Shown here: piece after piece, positions 3,981 through 9,760 of the stretch
How positions within the stretch are numbered: the first letter of the stretch is position 1
Layout of the letters: each line of letters begins with the position of its first letter
Notes under the pieces: model-generated
What the model was told of the DNA's origin: nothing
The model's input: only the letters and a program-made list of their open reading frames with translations
Database searches by the model: none
Position numbers and translations under genes: made by a program
Assembly: GCF_006345805.1 (NCBI RefSeq)
Contig: NC_043017.1
Coordinates: forward strand, 31,992,001-32,056,000
From: Octopus sinensis
Lineage: Eukaryota
Length of the DNA stretch: 64,000 nt
Reading direction: 5' to 3'

Positions 3981-4274
3981 GTTATCCGTAATAATGAAGG
4001 GTGAAATTAATTAATTTGGAATAATTATCAATTACACCAAGTAGTCTTCGGCATGTAAAAGCCTCATTTGAGGAAAATTTAAGCAATACTAAGCAATAAG
4101 GGTTCAGCAACGAATTGCCTTACCACATACCGAATTTAGAAATAGCAGTCAAAGGGTTATAGCTATTTCTTCTACTAAAAAGGGAGATCTCAGTAGAAAC
4201 AGCAATTGGAAGGCTGACACAAACAGGTAAGAGAGAATGAATTAACCGCAATCTATCAAACATTTTTAAAGTTA

Positions 4275-4388
4275 TCCACGGACGTACGTTTCGAAATCAA
4301 GTTTTAGGAAAGCATAAGAATTAAAATATTAAATATTAAATATTAAATAATTCTATCTTACCGAAACTTCTTTTCTCTTCAGCGTGGA
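4275..4388 (-). ncRNA. Type I hammerhead ribozyme, unit 1
   Basis: UCCACG-CUGAAGA-GAAA..UUUC-GAAAC-GUAC-GUC/CGUGGA; stems I, II and III all pair. Confidence 0.85.
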
Positions 4389-4877
4389 ATACTATAATCA
4401 TAAATGATTATATATTGAATTTTGAGATACTAGGAGGTACCAACTCAACTCAGTATCAGAGCGAGCCAGATCCTCAACTAGTATCACACGAATTCAAATT
4501 TGTGAATGAACGATTGTGTCAACAGCCCCTCCCACCGCGTGTAGCCAAACCAGATGCTGTAGTCATCTACTTGAGATAAAATATGGTTATCCGTAATAAT
4601 GAAGGGTGAAATTAATTATTTGGAATAATTAATTATCAATACACCAAGTAGTCTTCGGCATGTAAAAGCCTCTTTGAGGAAAATTTAAGTAATACTAAGC
4701 AATAAGGGTTCAGCAACGAATTGCCTTACCACATACCGAATTTAGAAATAGCAGCAGTCAAAGGGTTATATTTCTTCTCTACTAAAAAGGGAGATCTCAG
4801 TAGAAACAGCAATTGGAAGGCTGACACAAACGGTAAGAGAATGAATAAACCGCAATCTATCAACATTTTTAAAGTTA

Positions 4878-4992
4878 TCCACGGACGTACGTTTCGAAAT
4901 CAAGTTTTAGGAAAGCATAAGAATTAAAATATTAAATATTAAATATTAAATAATTCATCTCTTACCGAAACTTCTTTTCTCTTCAGCGTGGA
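4878..4992 (-). ncRNA. Type I hammerhead ribozyme, unit 2
   Basis: Same core and stems as unit 1. Confidence 0.85.
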
Positions 4993-5484
4993 ATACTATA
5001 ATCATAAATGATTATATATTGAATTTTGAGATACTAGGAGGTACCAACTCACTCAGTATCAGAGCGAGCCAGAATCCTCACTAGTATCAACCGAATTCAA
5101 ATTTGTGAATGAAACGATTGTGTCACACAGCCCTTCCCACCCGCGTGTAGCCAAAACAAGATGCTGTAGTCATCTACTGAGATAAAATATGGTTATCCGT
5201 AATAATGAAGGGTGAAATTAATTAATTTGGAATAATTATCAATTACACCAAGTAGTCTTCGGCATGTAAAAGCCTCATTTGAGGAAAATTTAAGTAATAC
5301 TAAGCAATAAGGGTTCAGCAACGAATTGCCTTACCACATACCGAATTTAGAAATAGCAGTCAAAGGGTTTAAGCTATTTCTTCTACTAAAAAGGGAGATC
5401 TCAGTAGAAACAGCAATTGGAAGGCTGACACAACAGGTAAGAGAGAATGAATTAACCGCAATCTATCAAACATTTTTAAAGTTA

Positions 5485-5597
5485 TCCACGGACGTACGTT
5501 TCGAAATCAAGTTTTAGGAAAGCATAAGAATTAAAATATTAAATATTAATATTAAATAATTCTATCTTACCGAAACTTCTTTTCTCTTCAGCGTGGA
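5485..5597 (-). ncRNA. Type I hammerhead ribozyme, unit 3
   Basis: Same core and stems as unit 1. Confidence 0.85.
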
Positions 5598-6087
5598 ATA
5601 CTATAATCATAAATGATTATATATTGAATTTTGAGATACTAGGAGGGTACCCAACTCAACTCAGTATCAGAGCGAGCCAGAATCCTCAACTAGTATCACC
5701 GAATTCAAATTTGTGAATGAAACGATTGTGTCAACAGCCCCTTCCCACCCGCGTGTAGCCAAAACAAGATGCTGTAGTCATCTACTGAGATAAAATATGG
5801 TTATCCGTAATAATGAAGGGGTAATTAATTTGGAATAATTATCAATTACACCAAGTAGTCTCGGCATGTAAAAGCCTCATTTGAGGAAAATTTAAGTAAT
5901 ACTAAGCAATAAGGGTTCAGCAACGAATTGCCTTACCACATACCGAATTTAGAAATAGCATCAAAGGGTTATATAGCTATTTCTCTACTAAAAAGGGAGA
6001 TCTCAGTAGAAACAGCAATTGGAAGGCTGACACAAACAGGTAAGAGAGAATGAATTAACCGCAATCTATCAAACATTTTTAAAGTTA

Positions 6088-6201
6088 TCCACGGACGTAC
6101 GTTTCGAAATCAAGTTTTAGGAAAGCATAAGAATTAAAATATTAAATATTAAATATTAAATAATTCTATCTTACCGAAACTTCTTTTCTCTTCAGCGTGG
6201 A
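6088..6201 (-). ncRNA. Type I hammerhead ribozyme, unit 4
   Basis: Same core and stems as unit 1. Confidence 0.85.
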
Positions 6202-6694
6202 ATACTATAATCATAAATGATTATATATTGAATTTTGAGATACTACTAGGAGTACCAACTCAACTCAGTATCAGAGCGAGCCAGAATCTCAACTAGTATC
6301 ACCGAATTCAAATTTGTGAATGAAACGATTGTGTCAACAGCCCCTTCCCCCCGCGTGTAGCCAAAACAAGATGCTGTAGTCATCTACTGAGATAAAATAT
6401 GGTTATCCGTAATAATGAAGGGTGAAATTAATTAATTTGGAATAATTATCAATTACACCAAGTAGTCTTCGGCATGTAAAAGCCTCATTTGAGGAAAATT
6501 TAAGTAATACTAAGCAATAAGGGTTCAGCAACGAATTGCCTTACCACATACCGAATTTAGAAATAGCAGTCAAAGGGTTATAGCTATTTCTTCTACTAAA
6601 AAGGGAGATCTCAGTAGAAACAGCATTGGAAGGCTGACACAAACAGGTAAGAGAGAATGAATTAACCGCAATCTATCAAACATTTTTAAAGTTA

Positions 6695-6807: not shown

Positions 6808-7300
6808 ATACTATAATCATAATGATTATATATTGAATTTTGAGATACTAGGAGGTACCAACTCAACTCAGTATCAGAGCGAGCCAGAATCCTCAACTAG
6901 TATCACCGAATTCAAATTTGTGAATGAAACGATTGTGTCAACAGCCCCTTCCCACCCGCGTGTAGCCAAAACAAGATGCTGTAGTCATCTACTGAGATAA
7001 AATATGGTTATCCGTAATAATGAAGGGTGAAATTAATTAATTTGGAATAATTATCAATTACACCAAGTAGTCTTCGGCATGTAAAAGCCTCATTTGAGGA
7101 AAATTTAAGTAATACTAAGCAATAAGGGTTCAGCAACGAATTGCCTTACCACATACCGAATTTAGAAATAGCAGTCAAAGGGTTATAGCTATTTCTTCTA
7201 CTAAAAAGGGAGATCTCAGTAGAAACAGCAATTGGAAGGCTGACACAAACAGGTAAGAGAGAATGAATTAACCGCAATCTATCAAACATTTTTAAAGTTA

Positions 7301-7414
7301 TCCACGGACGTACGTTTCGAAATCAAGTTTTAGGAAAGCATAAGAATTAAAATATTAAATATTAAATATTAAATAATTCTATCTTACCGAAACTTCTTTT
7401 CTCTTCAGCGTGGA
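7301..7414 (-). ncRNA. Type I hammerhead ribozyme, unit 6 (reference copy)
   Basis: CUGAAGA = plus 7402-7408; GAAAC = 7314-7318; predicted cleavage after GUC between 7307 and 7306; stem I = 7409-7414 pairing 7301-7306. Confidence 0.87.
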
Positions 7415-7905
7415 ATACTATAATCATAAATGATTATATATTGAATTTTGAGATACTAGGAGGTACCAACTCAACTCAGTATCAGAGCGAGCCAGAATCC
7501 TCAACTAGTATCACCGAATTCAAATTTGTGAATGAAACGATTGTGTCAACAGCCCCTTCCCACCCGCGTGTAGCCAAAACAAGATGCTGTAGTCATCTAC
7601 TGAGATAAAATATGGTTATCCGTAATAATGAAGGGTGAAATTAATTAATTTGGAATAATTATCAATTACACCAAGTAGTCTCGGCATGTAAAAGCCTCAT
7701 TTGAGAAAATTTAAGTAATACTAAGCAATAAGGGTTCAGCAACGAATTGCCTTACCACATACCGAATTTAGAAATAGCAGTCAAAGGGTTATAGCTATTT
7801 CTTCTACTAAAAAGGGAGATCTCAGTAGAAACAGCAATTGAAGGCTGACACAAACAGGTAAGAGAGAATGAATTAACCGCAATCTATCAAACATTTTTAA
7901 AGTTA

Positions 7906-8016
7906 TCCACGACGTACGTTTCGAAATCAAGTTTTGGAAGCATAAGAATTAAAATATTAAATATTAAATATTAAATAATTCTATCTTACCGAAACTTCTT
8001 TTCTCTTCAGCGTGGA
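7906..8016 (-). ncRNA. Type I hammerhead ribozyme, unit 7 (1-nt deletion at the cleavage site/stem I)
   Basis: Plus strand reads CCACGACG instead of CCACGGACG; may be a sequencing error. Confidence 0.65.
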
Positions 8017-8506
8017 ATACTATAATCATAAATGATTATATATTGAATTTTGAGATACTAGGAGGTACCAACTCAACTCAGTATCAGAGCGAGCCAGAAT
8101 CCTCAACTAGTATCACCGAATTCAAATTTGTGAATGAAACGATTGTGTCAACAGCCCTTCCCACCCGCGTGTAGCCAAAACAAGATGCTGTAGTCATCTA
8201 CTGAGATAAAATATGGTTATCCGTAATAATGAAGGGTGAAATTAATTAATTTGGAATAATTATCAATTACACCAAGTAGTCTTCGGCATGTAAAAGCCTC
8301 ATTTGAGGAAAATTTAAGTAATACTAAGCAATAAGGGTTCAGCAACGAATTGCCTTACCACATACCGAATTTAGAAATAGCAGTCAAAGGTTTATAGCTA
8401 TTTCTTCTACTAAAAAGGGAGATCTCAGTAGAAACAGCATTGGAAGGCTGACCAAACAGGTAAGAGAGAATGAATTAACCGCAATCTATCAACATTTTTA
8501 AAGTTA

Positions 8507-8618
8507 TCCACGGACGTACGTTTCGAAATCAAGTTTTAGGAAAGCATAAGAATTAAAATATTAAATATTAATATTAATAATTCTATCTTACCGAAACTTC
8601 TTTTCTCTTCAGCGTGGA
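8507..8618 (-). ncRNA. Type I hammerhead ribozyme, unit 8
   Basis: Same core and stems as unit 1. Confidence 0.85.
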
Positions 8619-9108
8619 ATACTATAATCATAATGATATATATTGAATTTTGAGATACTAGGAGGTACCAACTCCAACTCAGTATCAGAGCGAGCCAGAA
8701 TCCTCAACTAGTATCACCGATTCAAATTTGTGAATGAAACGATTGTGTCAACAGCCCTTCCCACCCGCGTGTAGCCAAAACAAGATGCTGTAGTCATCTA
8801 CTGAGATAAAATATGGTTATCCGTAATAATGAAGGGTGAAATTAATTAATTTGGAATAATTATCAATTACACCAAGTAGTCTTCGGCATGTAAAAGCCTC
8901 ATTTGAGGAAAATTTAAGTAATACTAAGCAATAAGGGTTCAGCAACGAATTGCCTTACCACATACCGAATTTAGAAATAGCAGTCAAAGGGTTATAGCTA
9001 TTTCTTCTACTAAAAGGGAGATCTCAGTAGAAACAGCAATTGGAAGGATGACACAAACAGGTAAGAGAGAATGAATTAACCGCAATCTATCAAACATTTT
9101 TAAAGTTA

Positions 9109-9219
9109 TCCACGGACGTACGTTTCGAAATCAAGTTTTAGGAAAGCATAAATTAAAATATTAAATATTAAATATTAATAATTCTATCTTACCGAAACTT
9201 CTTTTCTCTTCAGCGTGGA
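9109..9219 (-). ncRNA. Type I hammerhead ribozyme, unit 9
   Basis: Same core and stems as unit 1. Confidence 0.85.
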
Positions 9220-9760
9220 ATACTATAATCATAAATGATTATATTGAATTTTGAGATACTAGGAGGTACCAACTCAACTCAGTATCAGAGCGAGCCAGAA
9301 TCCTCAACTAGTATCACCGAATTCAAATTTGTGAATGAAACGATTGTGTCAACAGCCCCTCCCACCCGCGTTTAGCCAAAACAAGATGCGTTTCATCTAC
9401 TGAGATAAAATATGGTTATCCGTAATAATGAAGGGTGAAATTAATTAATTTGGAATAATTATCAATTACACCAAGTAGTCTTCGGCATGTAAAAGCCTCA
9501 TTTGAGGAAAATTAAGTAATACTAAGCAATAAGGGTTCAGCAACGATTGCCTTACCACATACCGAATTTAGAAATAGCAGTCAAAGGTTATAGCTATTTC
9601 TTCTACTAAAAAGGGAGATCTCAGTAGAAACAGCAATTGGATTCTACTGAGATCTCCCTTTTTAGTAGAAGAAATAGCTATAACCCTTTGACTGCTATTT
9701 CTAAATTCGGTATGTGGTAAGGCAATTCGTTGCTGAACCCTTATTGCTTAGTATTACTTA

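What the first reader, a model, noticed from the sequence alone, without database searches (positions are those of the whole stretch)
3981..9760. Retrozyme-like concatemer: nine tandem ~605-nt monomers, each with a hammerhead ribozyme
Seen: the minus strand of every full unit reads UCCACG-CUGAAGA-[stem II]-GAAAC-GUAC-GUC/CGUGGA. That is the conserved hammerhead core (CUGANGA, GAAA, NUH = GUC) with stems I-III pairing in type I topology, once per ~605 nt. No protein frame runs through the unit. Established: tandem type I hammerhead repeats (schistosome Sm-alpha, newt satellite 2, cricket pDo500, metazoan retrozymes, Penelope pseudo-LTRs) self-cleave to monomer RNAs, and retrozyme monomers circularise. 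Inference: this is a young non-autonomous ribozyme retroelement that would yield ~605-nt linear or circular RNAs, copied as a multimer by a Penelope-type RT. The monomer is longer than the few-hundred-nt animal retrozymes I know, and I am not aware of a described octopus family, though I could not search. Caveat: copy number may depend on the assembly.
Basis: partly seen in the sequence, partly recalled or inferred. Interest (0 to 1): 0.93.

Follow-up and report, generated by a model that had tools for sequence, protein, structure and literature searches.

The report
Tandem hammerhead-ribozyme retrozyme array insertion
A 5.8-kb block of about nine near-identical, non-coding 607-bp repeats, each carrying a complete self-cleaving hammerhead ribozyme motif, sits as a clean insertion inside an ordinary SINE-like repeat; it is a fresh example of a known class of animal mobile elements (non-LTR "retrozymes"), not a new kind of thing.

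Summary
On the minus strand, 9641..3976 is a head-to-tail array of a 607-nt unit: one 5'-truncated unit, eight full units and one 3'-truncated unit. It carries nine type I hammerhead motifs, UCCACG-CUGAAGA-[~80-nt helix II]-GAAAC-GUAC-GUC|CGUGGA. Eight are intact and one lacks C1.1.

Rfam does not call it at gathering score. Hammerhead_1 still aligns end to end (20.4 bits against a cut-off of 34), and the shortfall comes from a 79-nt insert in helix II. A structural descriptor finds 8 hits in the window and none in 200 shuffles.

New findings:
- Joining the two flanks rebuilds a ~400-bp SINE-like repeat that has at least seven paralogues in the window. The block is therefore an insertion into that repeat's internal (TA)n.
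- A 130-nt inverted, 5'-truncated copy abuts the array's 5' end. Together with the (TA)n target and the tandem form, this matches published Penelope-like element insertion architecture.
- The eight full units differ by 6 substitutions in 4.8 kb. The remaining differences are mostly homopolymer indels.
- ACGUACGU allows a double hammerhead.
- The predicted 607-nt circle is strongly structured (z = -7.5).

Verdict: a new member of the metazoan non-LTR retrozyme class with an unusually long helix II. RNA, cleavage, other genomic copies and host species remain untested.

The parts
3976..9641 (-). Head-to-tail array of the 607-nt unit. It comprises a 5'-truncated unit (consensus 71-607, 9641-9115), eight full units (9114-4281) and a 3'-truncated unit (consensus 1-305, 4280-3976).
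   Evidence: blastn and nhmmer of the consensus against the window. Unit boundaries were set at the GUC| sites.
9109..9219 (-). Hammerhead motif 1 (type I), cleavage after C at 9115.
8507..8618 (-). Hammerhead motif 2, cleavage after C at 8513.
7906..8016 (-). Hammerhead motif 3, cleavage site C at 7911. C1.1 is missing (a one-base deletion in a CC run), so helix I is out of register. This is probably an assembly error.
   Evidence: This was the only copy reported by Rfam in the 7-kb scan (16.2 bits).
7301..7414 (-). Hammerhead motif 4, cleavage after C at 7307.
   Evidence: Rfam RF00163 alignment over model positions 1-45/45, 20.4 bits. Also.
6695..6807 (-). Hammerhead motif 5, cleavage after C at 6701.
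6088..6201 (-). Hammerhead motif 6, cleavage after C at 6094.
5485..5597 (-). Hammerhead motif 7, cleavage after C at 5491.
4878..4992 (-). Hammerhead motif 8, cleavage after C at 4884.
4275..4388 (-). Hammerhead motif 9, cleavage after C at 4281.
9634..9763 (+). Inverted, 5'-truncated copy of the unit (consensus ~73/83-204), joined head-to-head to the array's 5' end. Its outer end abuts (TA)n.
   Evidence: blastn 97% identity; nhmmer E = 7.6e-41; sequence read directly.
9605..9666 (.). Head-to-head junction. Two 25-nt perfect arms flank a 12-nt spacer, ACAGCAATTGGA, which contains the palindrome CAATTG. This junction caused the sub-threshold 'miRNA' hits in Rfam.
3951..3975 (.). (TA)n target tract on the left flank.
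9764..9782 (.). (TA)n target tract on the right flank.
3773..3975 (+). Left half of the host SINE-like repeat that was split by the insertion.
   Evidence: The joined flanks align across the junction to at least 7 paralogues at 80-83% identity.
9764..9955 (+). Right half of the host SINE-like repeat.
12716..12812 (+). An older, diverged fragment (~78% identity) of the same unit, consensus ~89-182. The homology runs on to about position 204 and is then followed by (TA)n. This is the same end point as in the inverted piece.
   Evidence: nhmmer E = 2.7e-8; three-way alignment.

Best explanation
This is a very young insertion of a non-autonomous, non-LTR 'retrozyme': a non-coding 607-nt unit carrying one type I hammerhead ribozyme (HHR), present as a ~9.4-unit head-to-tail array.

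Proposed mechanism:
1. The minus strand is transcribed as a multimer. (Inferred.)
2. Each HHR cleaves after GUC. It acts either alone, with a weak 2-bp helix III capped by a GUAC tetraloop, or more stably as a double hammerhead. In the double form, the palindrome ACGUACGU of two motifs makes an 8-bp helix III. (The motif and its folding are shown in silico; cleavage is inferred from established hammerhead chemistry.)
3. Cleavage releases 607-nt monomers with 5'-OH and 2',3'-cyclic phosphate ends. A host RtcB-type tRNA ligase circularises them into a highly base-paired circRNA. (Inferred by analogy with mussel, coral and axolotl retrozymes, PMC7229834.)
4. A reverse transcriptase supplied in trans copies a circular or multimeric template. 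The most likely source is a Penelope-like element (PLE) with a GIY-YIG endonuclease. Synthesis is primed at a nicked (TA)n tract through A/U-rich microhomology inside the unit. This gives a tandem cDNA whose ends are not at the ribozyme site, plus an inverted 5'-truncated copy at the 5' junction. (The insertion, its phase, the inverted copy and the (TA)n target are shown; the enzyme is inferred.)
For: Ribozyme motif:
- The core is complete: C3-A9, G12-A14, A15.1-U16.1, G10.1-C11.1 and C17.
- Helix I is a 6-bp Watson-Crick helix.
- This holds in 8 of 9 copies.
- Rfam Hammerhead_1 aligns end to end.
- The unconstrained MFE of the 121-nt region already forms helices I and II (-22.9 kcal/mol, against -21.8 for the full HHR fold).
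- Cofolding two motifs gives the double hammerhead as the MFE (-58.2 against 2 x -22.9).

Whole unit:
- The circular 607-nt sense RNA folds to -162.3 kcal/mol, z = -7.5. The antisense gives z = -4.8.
- No ORF exceeds 68 codons.
- No other ribozyme was found on either strand.

Insertion:
- The joined flanks are collinear with at least 7 paralogous SINE-like copies across the junction. The break point lies in that repeat's internal (TA)n.
- The array starts at consensus position 71 and ends at about 300-305, not at the cleavage site.
- An inverted 5'-truncated piece lies at the 5' end.
- PMC8557442 describes the same three features for PLE insertions: partial tandems, an adjacent inverted 5'-truncated copy, and a microsatellite bias that includes (TA)n.

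Age:
- There are 6 substitutions in 4,834 nt of full units and none is shared between units.
- There are 76 indel nucleotides, of which 70% are homopolymer-associated.
- An older 78%-identical fragment lies 3 kb away.

Literature:
- Tandem type I HHR repeats are non-LTR retrozymes that are expressed as circRNAs (PMC7229834).
- Retrozymes are related to PLE pseudo-LTRs (10.64898/2026.07.22.740005).
Against: - Rfam scores it below the gathering threshold (20.4 against 34 bits).
- All copies are essentially identical, so there is no covariation support. The evidence amounts to one motif.
- Helix II is about 80 nt long. Canonical animal HHRs have 4 bp, and PLE minimal HHRs have 7-8 bp (PMC4209133). 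The usual loop 1-loop 2 contact therefore cannot form as such, and activity is not guaranteed.
- No RNA data are available.
- No RT or GIY-YIG ORF was found among the ten tested ORFs of the window. This was not a full six-frame scan.
- No other full copy could be retrieved. Three collection scans and one search with a translated frame of the unit found nothing, but these collections do not hold animal genomes.
- The array could have grown by unequal crossing-over after a smaller insertion.
- The copy number depends on the assembly.
Confidence: 0.78

Rival explanations
1. This is an ordinary local tandem duplication or satellite that happens to contain a hammerhead-like sequence. It has no ribozyme activity and no RNA-mediated origin.
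For: The Rfam score is below threshold. There is no covariation. My rough estimate is that loose hammerhead descriptors match by chance about 1e-8 per position, which is tens of hits per Gb-sized genome (own calculation). Arrays can also expand by unequal crossing-over.
Against: The block is an insertion with sharp ends inside a SINE-like repeat, not an in-situ duplication of local sequence. The motif satisfies every core position and pair, and it also has a palindromic helix III. There were 0 descriptor hits in 200 shuffles. The chance that one given 607-bp unit carries such a motif is about 1e-5. The sense RNA is more structured than the antisense. A diverged second fragment lies elsewhere in the window.
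Confidence: 0.08
2. The array is a run of pseudo-LTRs (3' ends) of an autonomous Penelope-like element, not a separate non-autonomous retrozyme family.
For: PLE pseudo-LTRs carry type I hammerheads and form tandem or inverted structures (PMC4209133, PMC8557442). Retrozymes and pseudo-LTRs are phylogenetically intermixed in Xenopus.
Against: Nine consecutive units have no ORF between or beside them, and the flanks are (TA)n and SINE sequence. [quoted passage not shown] It is not the PLE minimal type (one search compared).
Confidence: 0.06
3. The multimer is partly an assembly artefact. The element is real, but the number of units (about 9.4) or the inverted junction was created or miscounted by a long-read assembler.
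For: Differences between units are dominated by homopolymer indels (76 indel nucleotides against 6 substitutions). That is the signature of imperfectly polished long reads. Near-identical 600-bp repeats are hard to count.
Against: Both outer junctions are clean and rebuild a known repeat. The inverted piece is short and internal, not at a contig end. Assemblers usually collapse arrays rather than expand them. This cannot be tested without reads.
Confidence: 0.1
4. The array is an integrated cDNA of an exogenous viroid-like or satellite-like circular RNA replicon rather than a genomic retroelement family.
For: It is a small non-coding unit with a hammerhead and strong predicted structure. Multimeric copies are what rolling-circle intermediates would yield.
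Against: Only one polarity carries a ribozyme. A 78%-identical older fragment in the same window indicates long residence in this genome. Scans of the viral and metagenome collections gave no match.
Confidence: 0.03

Closest known systems
Metazoan non-LTR retrozymes (Cervera & de la Pena 2020, PMC7229834: Mytilus galloprovincialis ~350-390 bp, Acropora ~220-240 bp, axolotl ~330-350 bp)
   Same: Head-to-tail repeats with one type I hammerhead per unit. No ORF and no LTRs. Low GC (34%). Predicted highly self-paired circular monomer. Helix III of 2 bp capped by a tetraloop, which the paper describes as typical of invertebrate HHRs.
   Different: The unit is 607 nt. That exceeds the 170-400 nt of that paper but lies inside the 51-972 bp range of the 2026 preprint. 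Helix II is about 80 nt instead of 4 bp plus a loop, so the motif falls below Rfam's threshold. There is no expression or cleavage data here.
Newt satellite 2 and the Schistosoma Sm-alpha hammerheads
   Same: A type I hammerhead in tandem repeats. Helix III is weak and palindromic, which allows a double hammerhead between neighbouring motifs (Forster et al. 1988 as cited in PMC4209133).
   Different: Those units are about 330 nt with compact ~45-50-nt ribozymes and a defined loop 1-loop 2 contact. In this element, internal loops occupy those positions.
Dolichopoda cave-cricket pDo500 satellite (PMC2837043)
   Same: A roughly 500-bp non-coding tandem unit with one hammerhead. Both single and double hammerhead models have been proposed. 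The C1.1-G2.1 pair is conserved.
   Different: The pDo500 ribozyme is 49 nt, and it is a large, old satellite with covariation across 12 species. Here there is a single young 9-unit insertion with no comparative data.
Penelope-like element insertions and their pseudo-LTR minimal hammerheads (PMC4209133, PMC8557442)
   Same: The insertion architecture matches: partial tandem, an inverted 5'-truncated copy at the 5' end, and a microsatellite (TA)n target. A type I hammerhead is present.
   Different: There is no RT/GIY-YIG ORF. The hammerhead is not the minimal type: it has no bulged base after A9, helix III is present, and helix I is 6 bp rather than 4-5 bp.
Plant LTR retrozymes (PMC4918200)
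   Same: A non-autonomous element that is processed by hammerheads into a circRNA of about 600-1000 nt.
   Different: The plant elements use type III hammerheads inside LTRs, have PBS and PPT motifs, GC above 55% and 4-bp TSDs, and are mobilised by Gypsy elements. None of these features is present here.

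Membership tests
Hammerhead ribozyme, type I (Rfam RF00163) | Conserved core: C3 U4 G5 A6 N7 G8 A9, G12 A13 A14, and H17 (not G) at the cleavage site | tested here: met
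   CUGAAGA, GAA and GUC are present in all 9 copies.
Hammerhead ribozyme, type I (Rfam RF00163) | Three helices around the core, with helix I open (type I), and with the G10.1-C11.1 and A15.1-U16.1 pairs | tested here: met
   Helix I is UCCACG/CGUGGA (6 bp) in 8 of 9 copies. Helix II starts with G-C. Helix III is A-U plus C-G capped by GUAC.
Hammerhead ribozyme, type I (Rfam RF00163) | Score at or above Rfam's gathering threshold (34 bits) | tested here: not met
   The score is 20.4 bits over model positions 1-45/45. The deficit is explained by a 79-nt insert in helix II where the model has 10.
Hammerhead ribozyme, type I (Rfam RF00163) | Compensatory changes that maintain the helices | tested here: inconclusive
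   The copies differ by 6 substitutions in 4.8 kb and none lies in a helix I or III pair. No relatives could be retrieved.
Hammerhead ribozyme, type I (Rfam RF00163) | Site-specific self-cleavage | not testable with these tools
   This needs in vitro transcription of monomer and dimer constructs.
Metazoan non-LTR retrozyme | Head-to-tail repeats, each carrying a type I hammerhead | tested here: met
   About 9.4 units and 9 motifs at a spacing of 602-607 nt.
Metazoan non-LTR retrozyme | Non-coding, no LTRs, GC below 50% | tested here: met
   The longest open frame is 68 codons. The array abuts (TA)n directly on both sides. GC is 34%. PBS and PPT motifs were not searched for specifically.
Metazoan non-LTR retrozyme | Monomer predicted to form a stable, highly self-paired circle | tested here: met
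   Circular MFE is -162.3 kcal/mol, z = -7.5, with 64% of bases paired.
Metazoan non-LTR retrozyme | Dispersed genomic copies that arose by insertion | tested here: inconclusive
   This locus is shown to be an insertion, and one diverged fragment lies at 12716-12812. A genome-wide copy count is not possible with these tools.
Metazoan non-LTR retrozyme | Expressed as linear and circular monomer RNA | not testable with these tools
   No transcriptome is available.
Metazoan non-LTR retrozyme | Co-occurrence with autonomous Penelope-like elements in the same genome | not testable with these tools
   No PLE domain was found among 10 ORFs of the window. If the host is an octopus, O. vulgaris has 31 recently active PLE families (PMC13282606). 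The host was not verified.
Penelope-like element (autonomous) | ORF encoding an RT plus a GIY-YIG endonuclease | tested here: not met
   There is no ORF in or next to the array. The element is therefore not filed as a PLE.
PLE-type insertion architecture | Partial tandem, plus an adjacent inverted 5'-truncated copy, plus a microsatellite target | tested here: met
   compared with the description in PMC8557442.
PLE minimal hammerhead (min-HHR) | [quoted passage not shown] | tested here: not met
   G10.1 follows A9 directly, helix I is 6 bp, and helix III has a GUAC tetraloop. The motif is canonical-like, not minimal.

The most novel reading that the evidence does not exclude
This would be the first retrozyme family described in a cephalopod, carrying a structurally distinct hammerhead subclass. 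The subclass would have an ~80-nt helix II in which internal loops replace the usual hairpin-loop tertiary contact. One 2x2 internal loop lies 6 bp up helix I and another lies 4 bp up helix II, which are the canonical distances. Standard Rfam annotation would miss this subclass systematically.

The clean junctions would also give the first locus-level evidence that retrozyme circRNAs are integrated by Penelope-type machinery. Those junctions are a (TA)n target, A/U-rich microhomology at two recurrent 3' end points (consensus positions ~204 and ~305), and an inverted 5' copy.
Probability: 0.25. Interest if true: 0.55.

Novelty: new member of a known kind. Interest (0 to 1): 0.4.

Why it matters
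Retrozymes are the main source of ribozyme-processed circular RNAs in animals. Two things about them remain open: how they are mobilised, and how many are missed by annotation.

This locus is useful on three counts:
1. It is a near-pristine insertion whose empty site can be rebuilt. Its junctions can therefore be read directly, and they look like Penelope-type integration. The literature infers this link mainly from co-occurrence and pseudo-LTR similarity. The 2020 review notes that the repeats themselves show no motif pointing to a partner (PMC7761336).
2. Its hammerhead escapes Rfam's threshold only because of a long helix II. Searches based on covariance models may therefore undercount such elements.
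3. If the host is a cephalopod, it extends retrozymes to a clade in which I found none described.

It does not open a new category.

Tried and rejected
- **Rfam at gathering score on the whole window:** nothing found. The sub-threshold 'miRNA' hits at 9575-9695 are the head-to-head junction hairpin, not miRNA genes.
- **Retrieving relatives:**
  - Two metagenome scans and one viral-contig scan with exact or gapped ribozyme patterns gave 0 hits.
  - A protein search with the unit's longest open frame, hoping to catch gene calls on assemblies, gave 0 hits.
  - These collections do not contain animal genomes, so the negatives say nothing about copy number.
- **Identifying the host:** a search with a 212-aa retroelement-like ORF (30790-31425) gave no hit. 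The host remains unverified.
- **Other CUGANGA...GAAAC matches**:
  - 63932-63959(-) and 38481-38511(-) lack helix I or the cleavage site and are rejected as chance.
  - 10719-10742(-) and 61546-61570(-) resemble decayed PLE minimal hammerheads, but their flanks are only about 50% alike. They are noted but not counted.
- **tRNA-like or Pol III origin:** ARAGORN finds nothing. The sense strand has six T4-5 runs, which argues against Pol III read-through.
- **Similarity of the unit to the flanking SINE:** nhmmer E = 0.23-2.4, not significant.
- **Conservation of the ribozyme region compared with the rest of the unit:** uninformative, because variation is dominated by homopolymer indels.

Full report

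Yes. Direct-repeat detection shows a ~605-nt period across 3976-9640. TRF missed it only because its maximum period is 500. I cut the minus strand at every GTACGTC|(C)GTGGA. This gave eight full units of 602-607 nt and a 607-nt consensus.

The consensus maps back as follows:
- 9641-9115, consensus positions 71-607.
- Eight full units.
- 4280-3976, consensus positions 1-305.
- All of these are on the minus strand.
- A piece covering positions 73-204 lies at 9634-9763 in the opposite orientation.

The motif occurs nine times. The copy at 8016-7906 lacks C1.1.

No frame stays open for more than 68 codons, and 607 is not a multiple of three.

**2. Is the motif a hammerhead, and is it more than chance?**

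Every invariant core position is present:
- C3-A9 as CUGAAGA.
- G12-A14.
- The A15.1-U16.1 and G10.1-C11.1 pairs.
- C17 at the cleavage site.

Helix I is six Watson-Crick pairs. Helix III is A-U plus C-G capped by GUAC.

Rfam gives no hit at gathering score. When a single copy is searched, Hammerhead_1 (RF00163) aligns over model positions 1-45/45 at 20.4 bits, with E = 0.0079 for that 151-nt search. There are 79 inserted nucleotides in helix II where the model has 10. The shortfall against the 34-bit cut-off is therefore an insertion penalty, not a core defect.

Further checks:
- A descriptor of my own finds the eight intact copies and nothing else in the window. It finds nothing in 200 dinucleotide shuffles.
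- My rough calculation puts chance matches to such a loose descriptor at about 1e-8 per position. That means tens per Gb-sized genome, but only about 1e-5 for any one 607-bp unit.
- The unconstrained MFE of the 121-nt region already forms helices I and II (-22.9 kcal/mol). Forcing the full hammerhead costs 1.1 kcal/mol.
- Because the copies are duplicates, this is one independent motif. There is no covariation evidence.

**3.

(a) *Helix III.* It lies within ACGUACGU, a perfect 8-nt palindrome. Cofolding two motifs gives the classic double hammerhead as the MFE: an intermolecular 8-bp helix III with strand-swapped helix I. Its energy is -58.2 kcal/mol against 2 x -22.9. The isolated helix III hairpin has no predicted stability. 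This is the arrangement described for newt, schistosome and many animal type I hammerheads (PMC4209133).

(b) *Helix II.* It is an ~80-nt imperfect hairpin with an (AAUAUUU)n tip. That is far longer than the 4 bp of canonical animal motifs or the 7-8 bp of PLE minimal motifs. In the predicted folds a 2x2 internal loop follows the first 4 bp of helix II, and another follows the 6 bp of helix I. These are the canonical distances of the loop 1-loop 2 contact. That these internal loops substitute for that contact is my inference only.

(c) *The whole unit.* The 607-nt sense circle is predicted at -162.3 kcal/mol, z = -7.5 and 64% paired, with helices I and II retained. The antisense gives z = -4.8. 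No second ribozyme appears on either strand.

**4. It is an insertion, and its junctions are informative**

Both ends abut (TA)n. I joined 3640-3975 to 9764-10000. The result aligns without interruption across the junction to at least seven paralogous copies of a ~400-bp SINE-like repeat in this window, at 80-83% identity. Examples are 32476-32069, 57301-57699, 16149-16547 and 1099-1502. The break point falls in that repeat's internal (TA)n. The joined (TA)n is longer than in the paralogues. This could be a target duplication or microsatellite growth, and I cannot tell which.

The array is out of phase with the ribozyme:
- It starts at consensus position 71.
- It ends at about 300-305, where CAUAU of the unit overlaps the (TA)n.
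- The template was therefore not a cleaved linear monomer.

At the 5' end, a ~120-130-nt copy of positions ~83-204 is joined head-to-head through a 12-nt spacer containing CAATTG. Its outer end again meets (TA)n.

A 78%-identical older fragment at 12716-12812 runs on to the same position ~204 and is also followed by (TA)n. This recurrent end point is unexplained. It could be a preferred priming site or the 3' end of an ancestral module.

Three features are those described for Penelope-like element insertions, non-autonomous ones included (PMC8557442):
- Partial tandems.
- An inverted 5'-truncated copy adjacent to the 5' end.
- Insertion into microsatellites such as (TA)n.

**5. Age and assembly quality**

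Against the consensus, the eight full units carry 6 substitutions in 4,834 nt and none is shared between units. They carry 76 indel nucleotides, 70% at homopolymers.

This is what lightly polished long reads look like. The true divergence is about 0.1% or less, and the single 'broken' ribozyme is probably an error. The unit count cannot be verified without reads.

**6. Mechanism (most likely)**

1. The minus strand is transcribed as a multimer.
2. Each hammerhead cleaves after GUC, singly or as a double hammerhead.
3. This releases 607-nt monomers with 5'-OH and 2',3'-cyclic phosphate ends.
4. An RtcB-type ligase circularises them.
5. A trans-acting RT, most plausibly from a Penelope-like element, reverse transcribes the circle or multimer. 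Synthesis is primed on a nicked (TA)n, giving tandem cDNA.

The motif, the folds, the insertion, the phase, the inverted copy and the target are shown here. Transcription, cleavage, circularisation and the identity of the RT are inferred from PMC7229834, PMC7761336 and the 2026 preprint linking retrozymes to PLE pseudo-LTRs.

No PLE domain was found among ten ORFs tested. Only a mariner Transposase_1 fragment and a weak integrase match appeared. This was not a full six-frame scan.

**7. Comparison and novelty**

The element meets the testable defining features of metazoan non-LTR retrozymes: tandem type I hammerhead units, no coding capacity, no LTRs, GC of 34% and a self-paired circle.

- It is not a PLE, because it has no ORF.
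- Its ribozyme is not the PLE minimal type.
- The unit length is not exceptional. Family consensus lengths of 51-972 bp are reported, with a mean of 650 bp in ray-finned fishes.
- The long helix II is unusual and explains why Rfam fails to call it.
- I found no paper describing hammerheads or retrozymes in octopus or other cephalopods.
- O. vulgaris is reported to have 31 recently active PLE families.
- I could not confirm the host species.

Verdict: a new member of a known kind, of moderate interest. Its value lies mainly in being an unusually clean insertion for studying how retrozymes integrate.

Noticed in passing
window 12716-12830 (+): A diverged (~78%) fragment of the retrozyme unit, consensus ~80-204. 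It ends at (TA)n at the same consensus position as the inverted piece at 9634-9763. Position ~204 may be a recurrent 3' end point, or this segment may be an independent module.
   Followed up: partly
window 10719-10742 (-) and 61546-61570 (-): Two motifs of the form CUGAUGA-A-GAGC...GAAAC, with a 4-bp helix I candidate and a bulged A after position 9. They resemble decayed Penelope-type minimal hammerheads. In both, the cleavage triplet is mutated (GCU / AUG). The flanks are only about 50% alike.
   Followed up: partly
window, e.g. 1099-1502, 16149-16547, 32069-32476, 46448-46827, 47489-47881, 56876-57273, 57301-57699: A ~400-bp SINE-like interspersed repeat with an internal (CA/TA)n microsatellite is very abundant: more than 15 full or partial copies in 64 kb. 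One copy hosts the retrozyme insertion.
   Followed up: partly
window 3976-9641 (and by implication the whole window): Copies of one sequence differ mostly by homopolymer indels (76 indel nucleotides against 6 substitutions). This suggests an imperfectly polished long-read assembly. Frameshifted ORFs elsewhere, such as the three overlapping frames at 25126-26121, may be artefacts of the same kind.
   Followed up: partly
window 41996-43283: A tandem repeat with a 144-bp period, 8.9 copies, 95% matches. It has no hammerhead core. An overlapping 199-202-codon open frame on the minus strand is probably an artefact of the repeat.
   Followed up: no
window 44781-45791: A tandem repeat with a 390-bp period, 2.6 copies, 94% matches. 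It was not characterised.
   Followed up: no
window 37696-38118: A 16-bp minisatellite (CTAGGACAATTACCCA), 26.6 copies.
   Followed up: no
window 28105-28809 (+), 18475-18771 (-), 31734-32057 (-): Transposon remnants. There is a mariner-type transposase (Pfam Transposase_1, E = 5e-18) with an upstream HTH-like ORF, and a second mariner-like C-terminal fragment recognised by eye. There is also a weak integrase-core (rve) match, E = 6e-4, below Pfam's cut-off.
   Followed up: partly
window 1965-2557: A very long (ATT)n microsatellite, about 200 copies. Many further (ATT)n and (TA)n tracts occur throughout the window.
   Followed up: no
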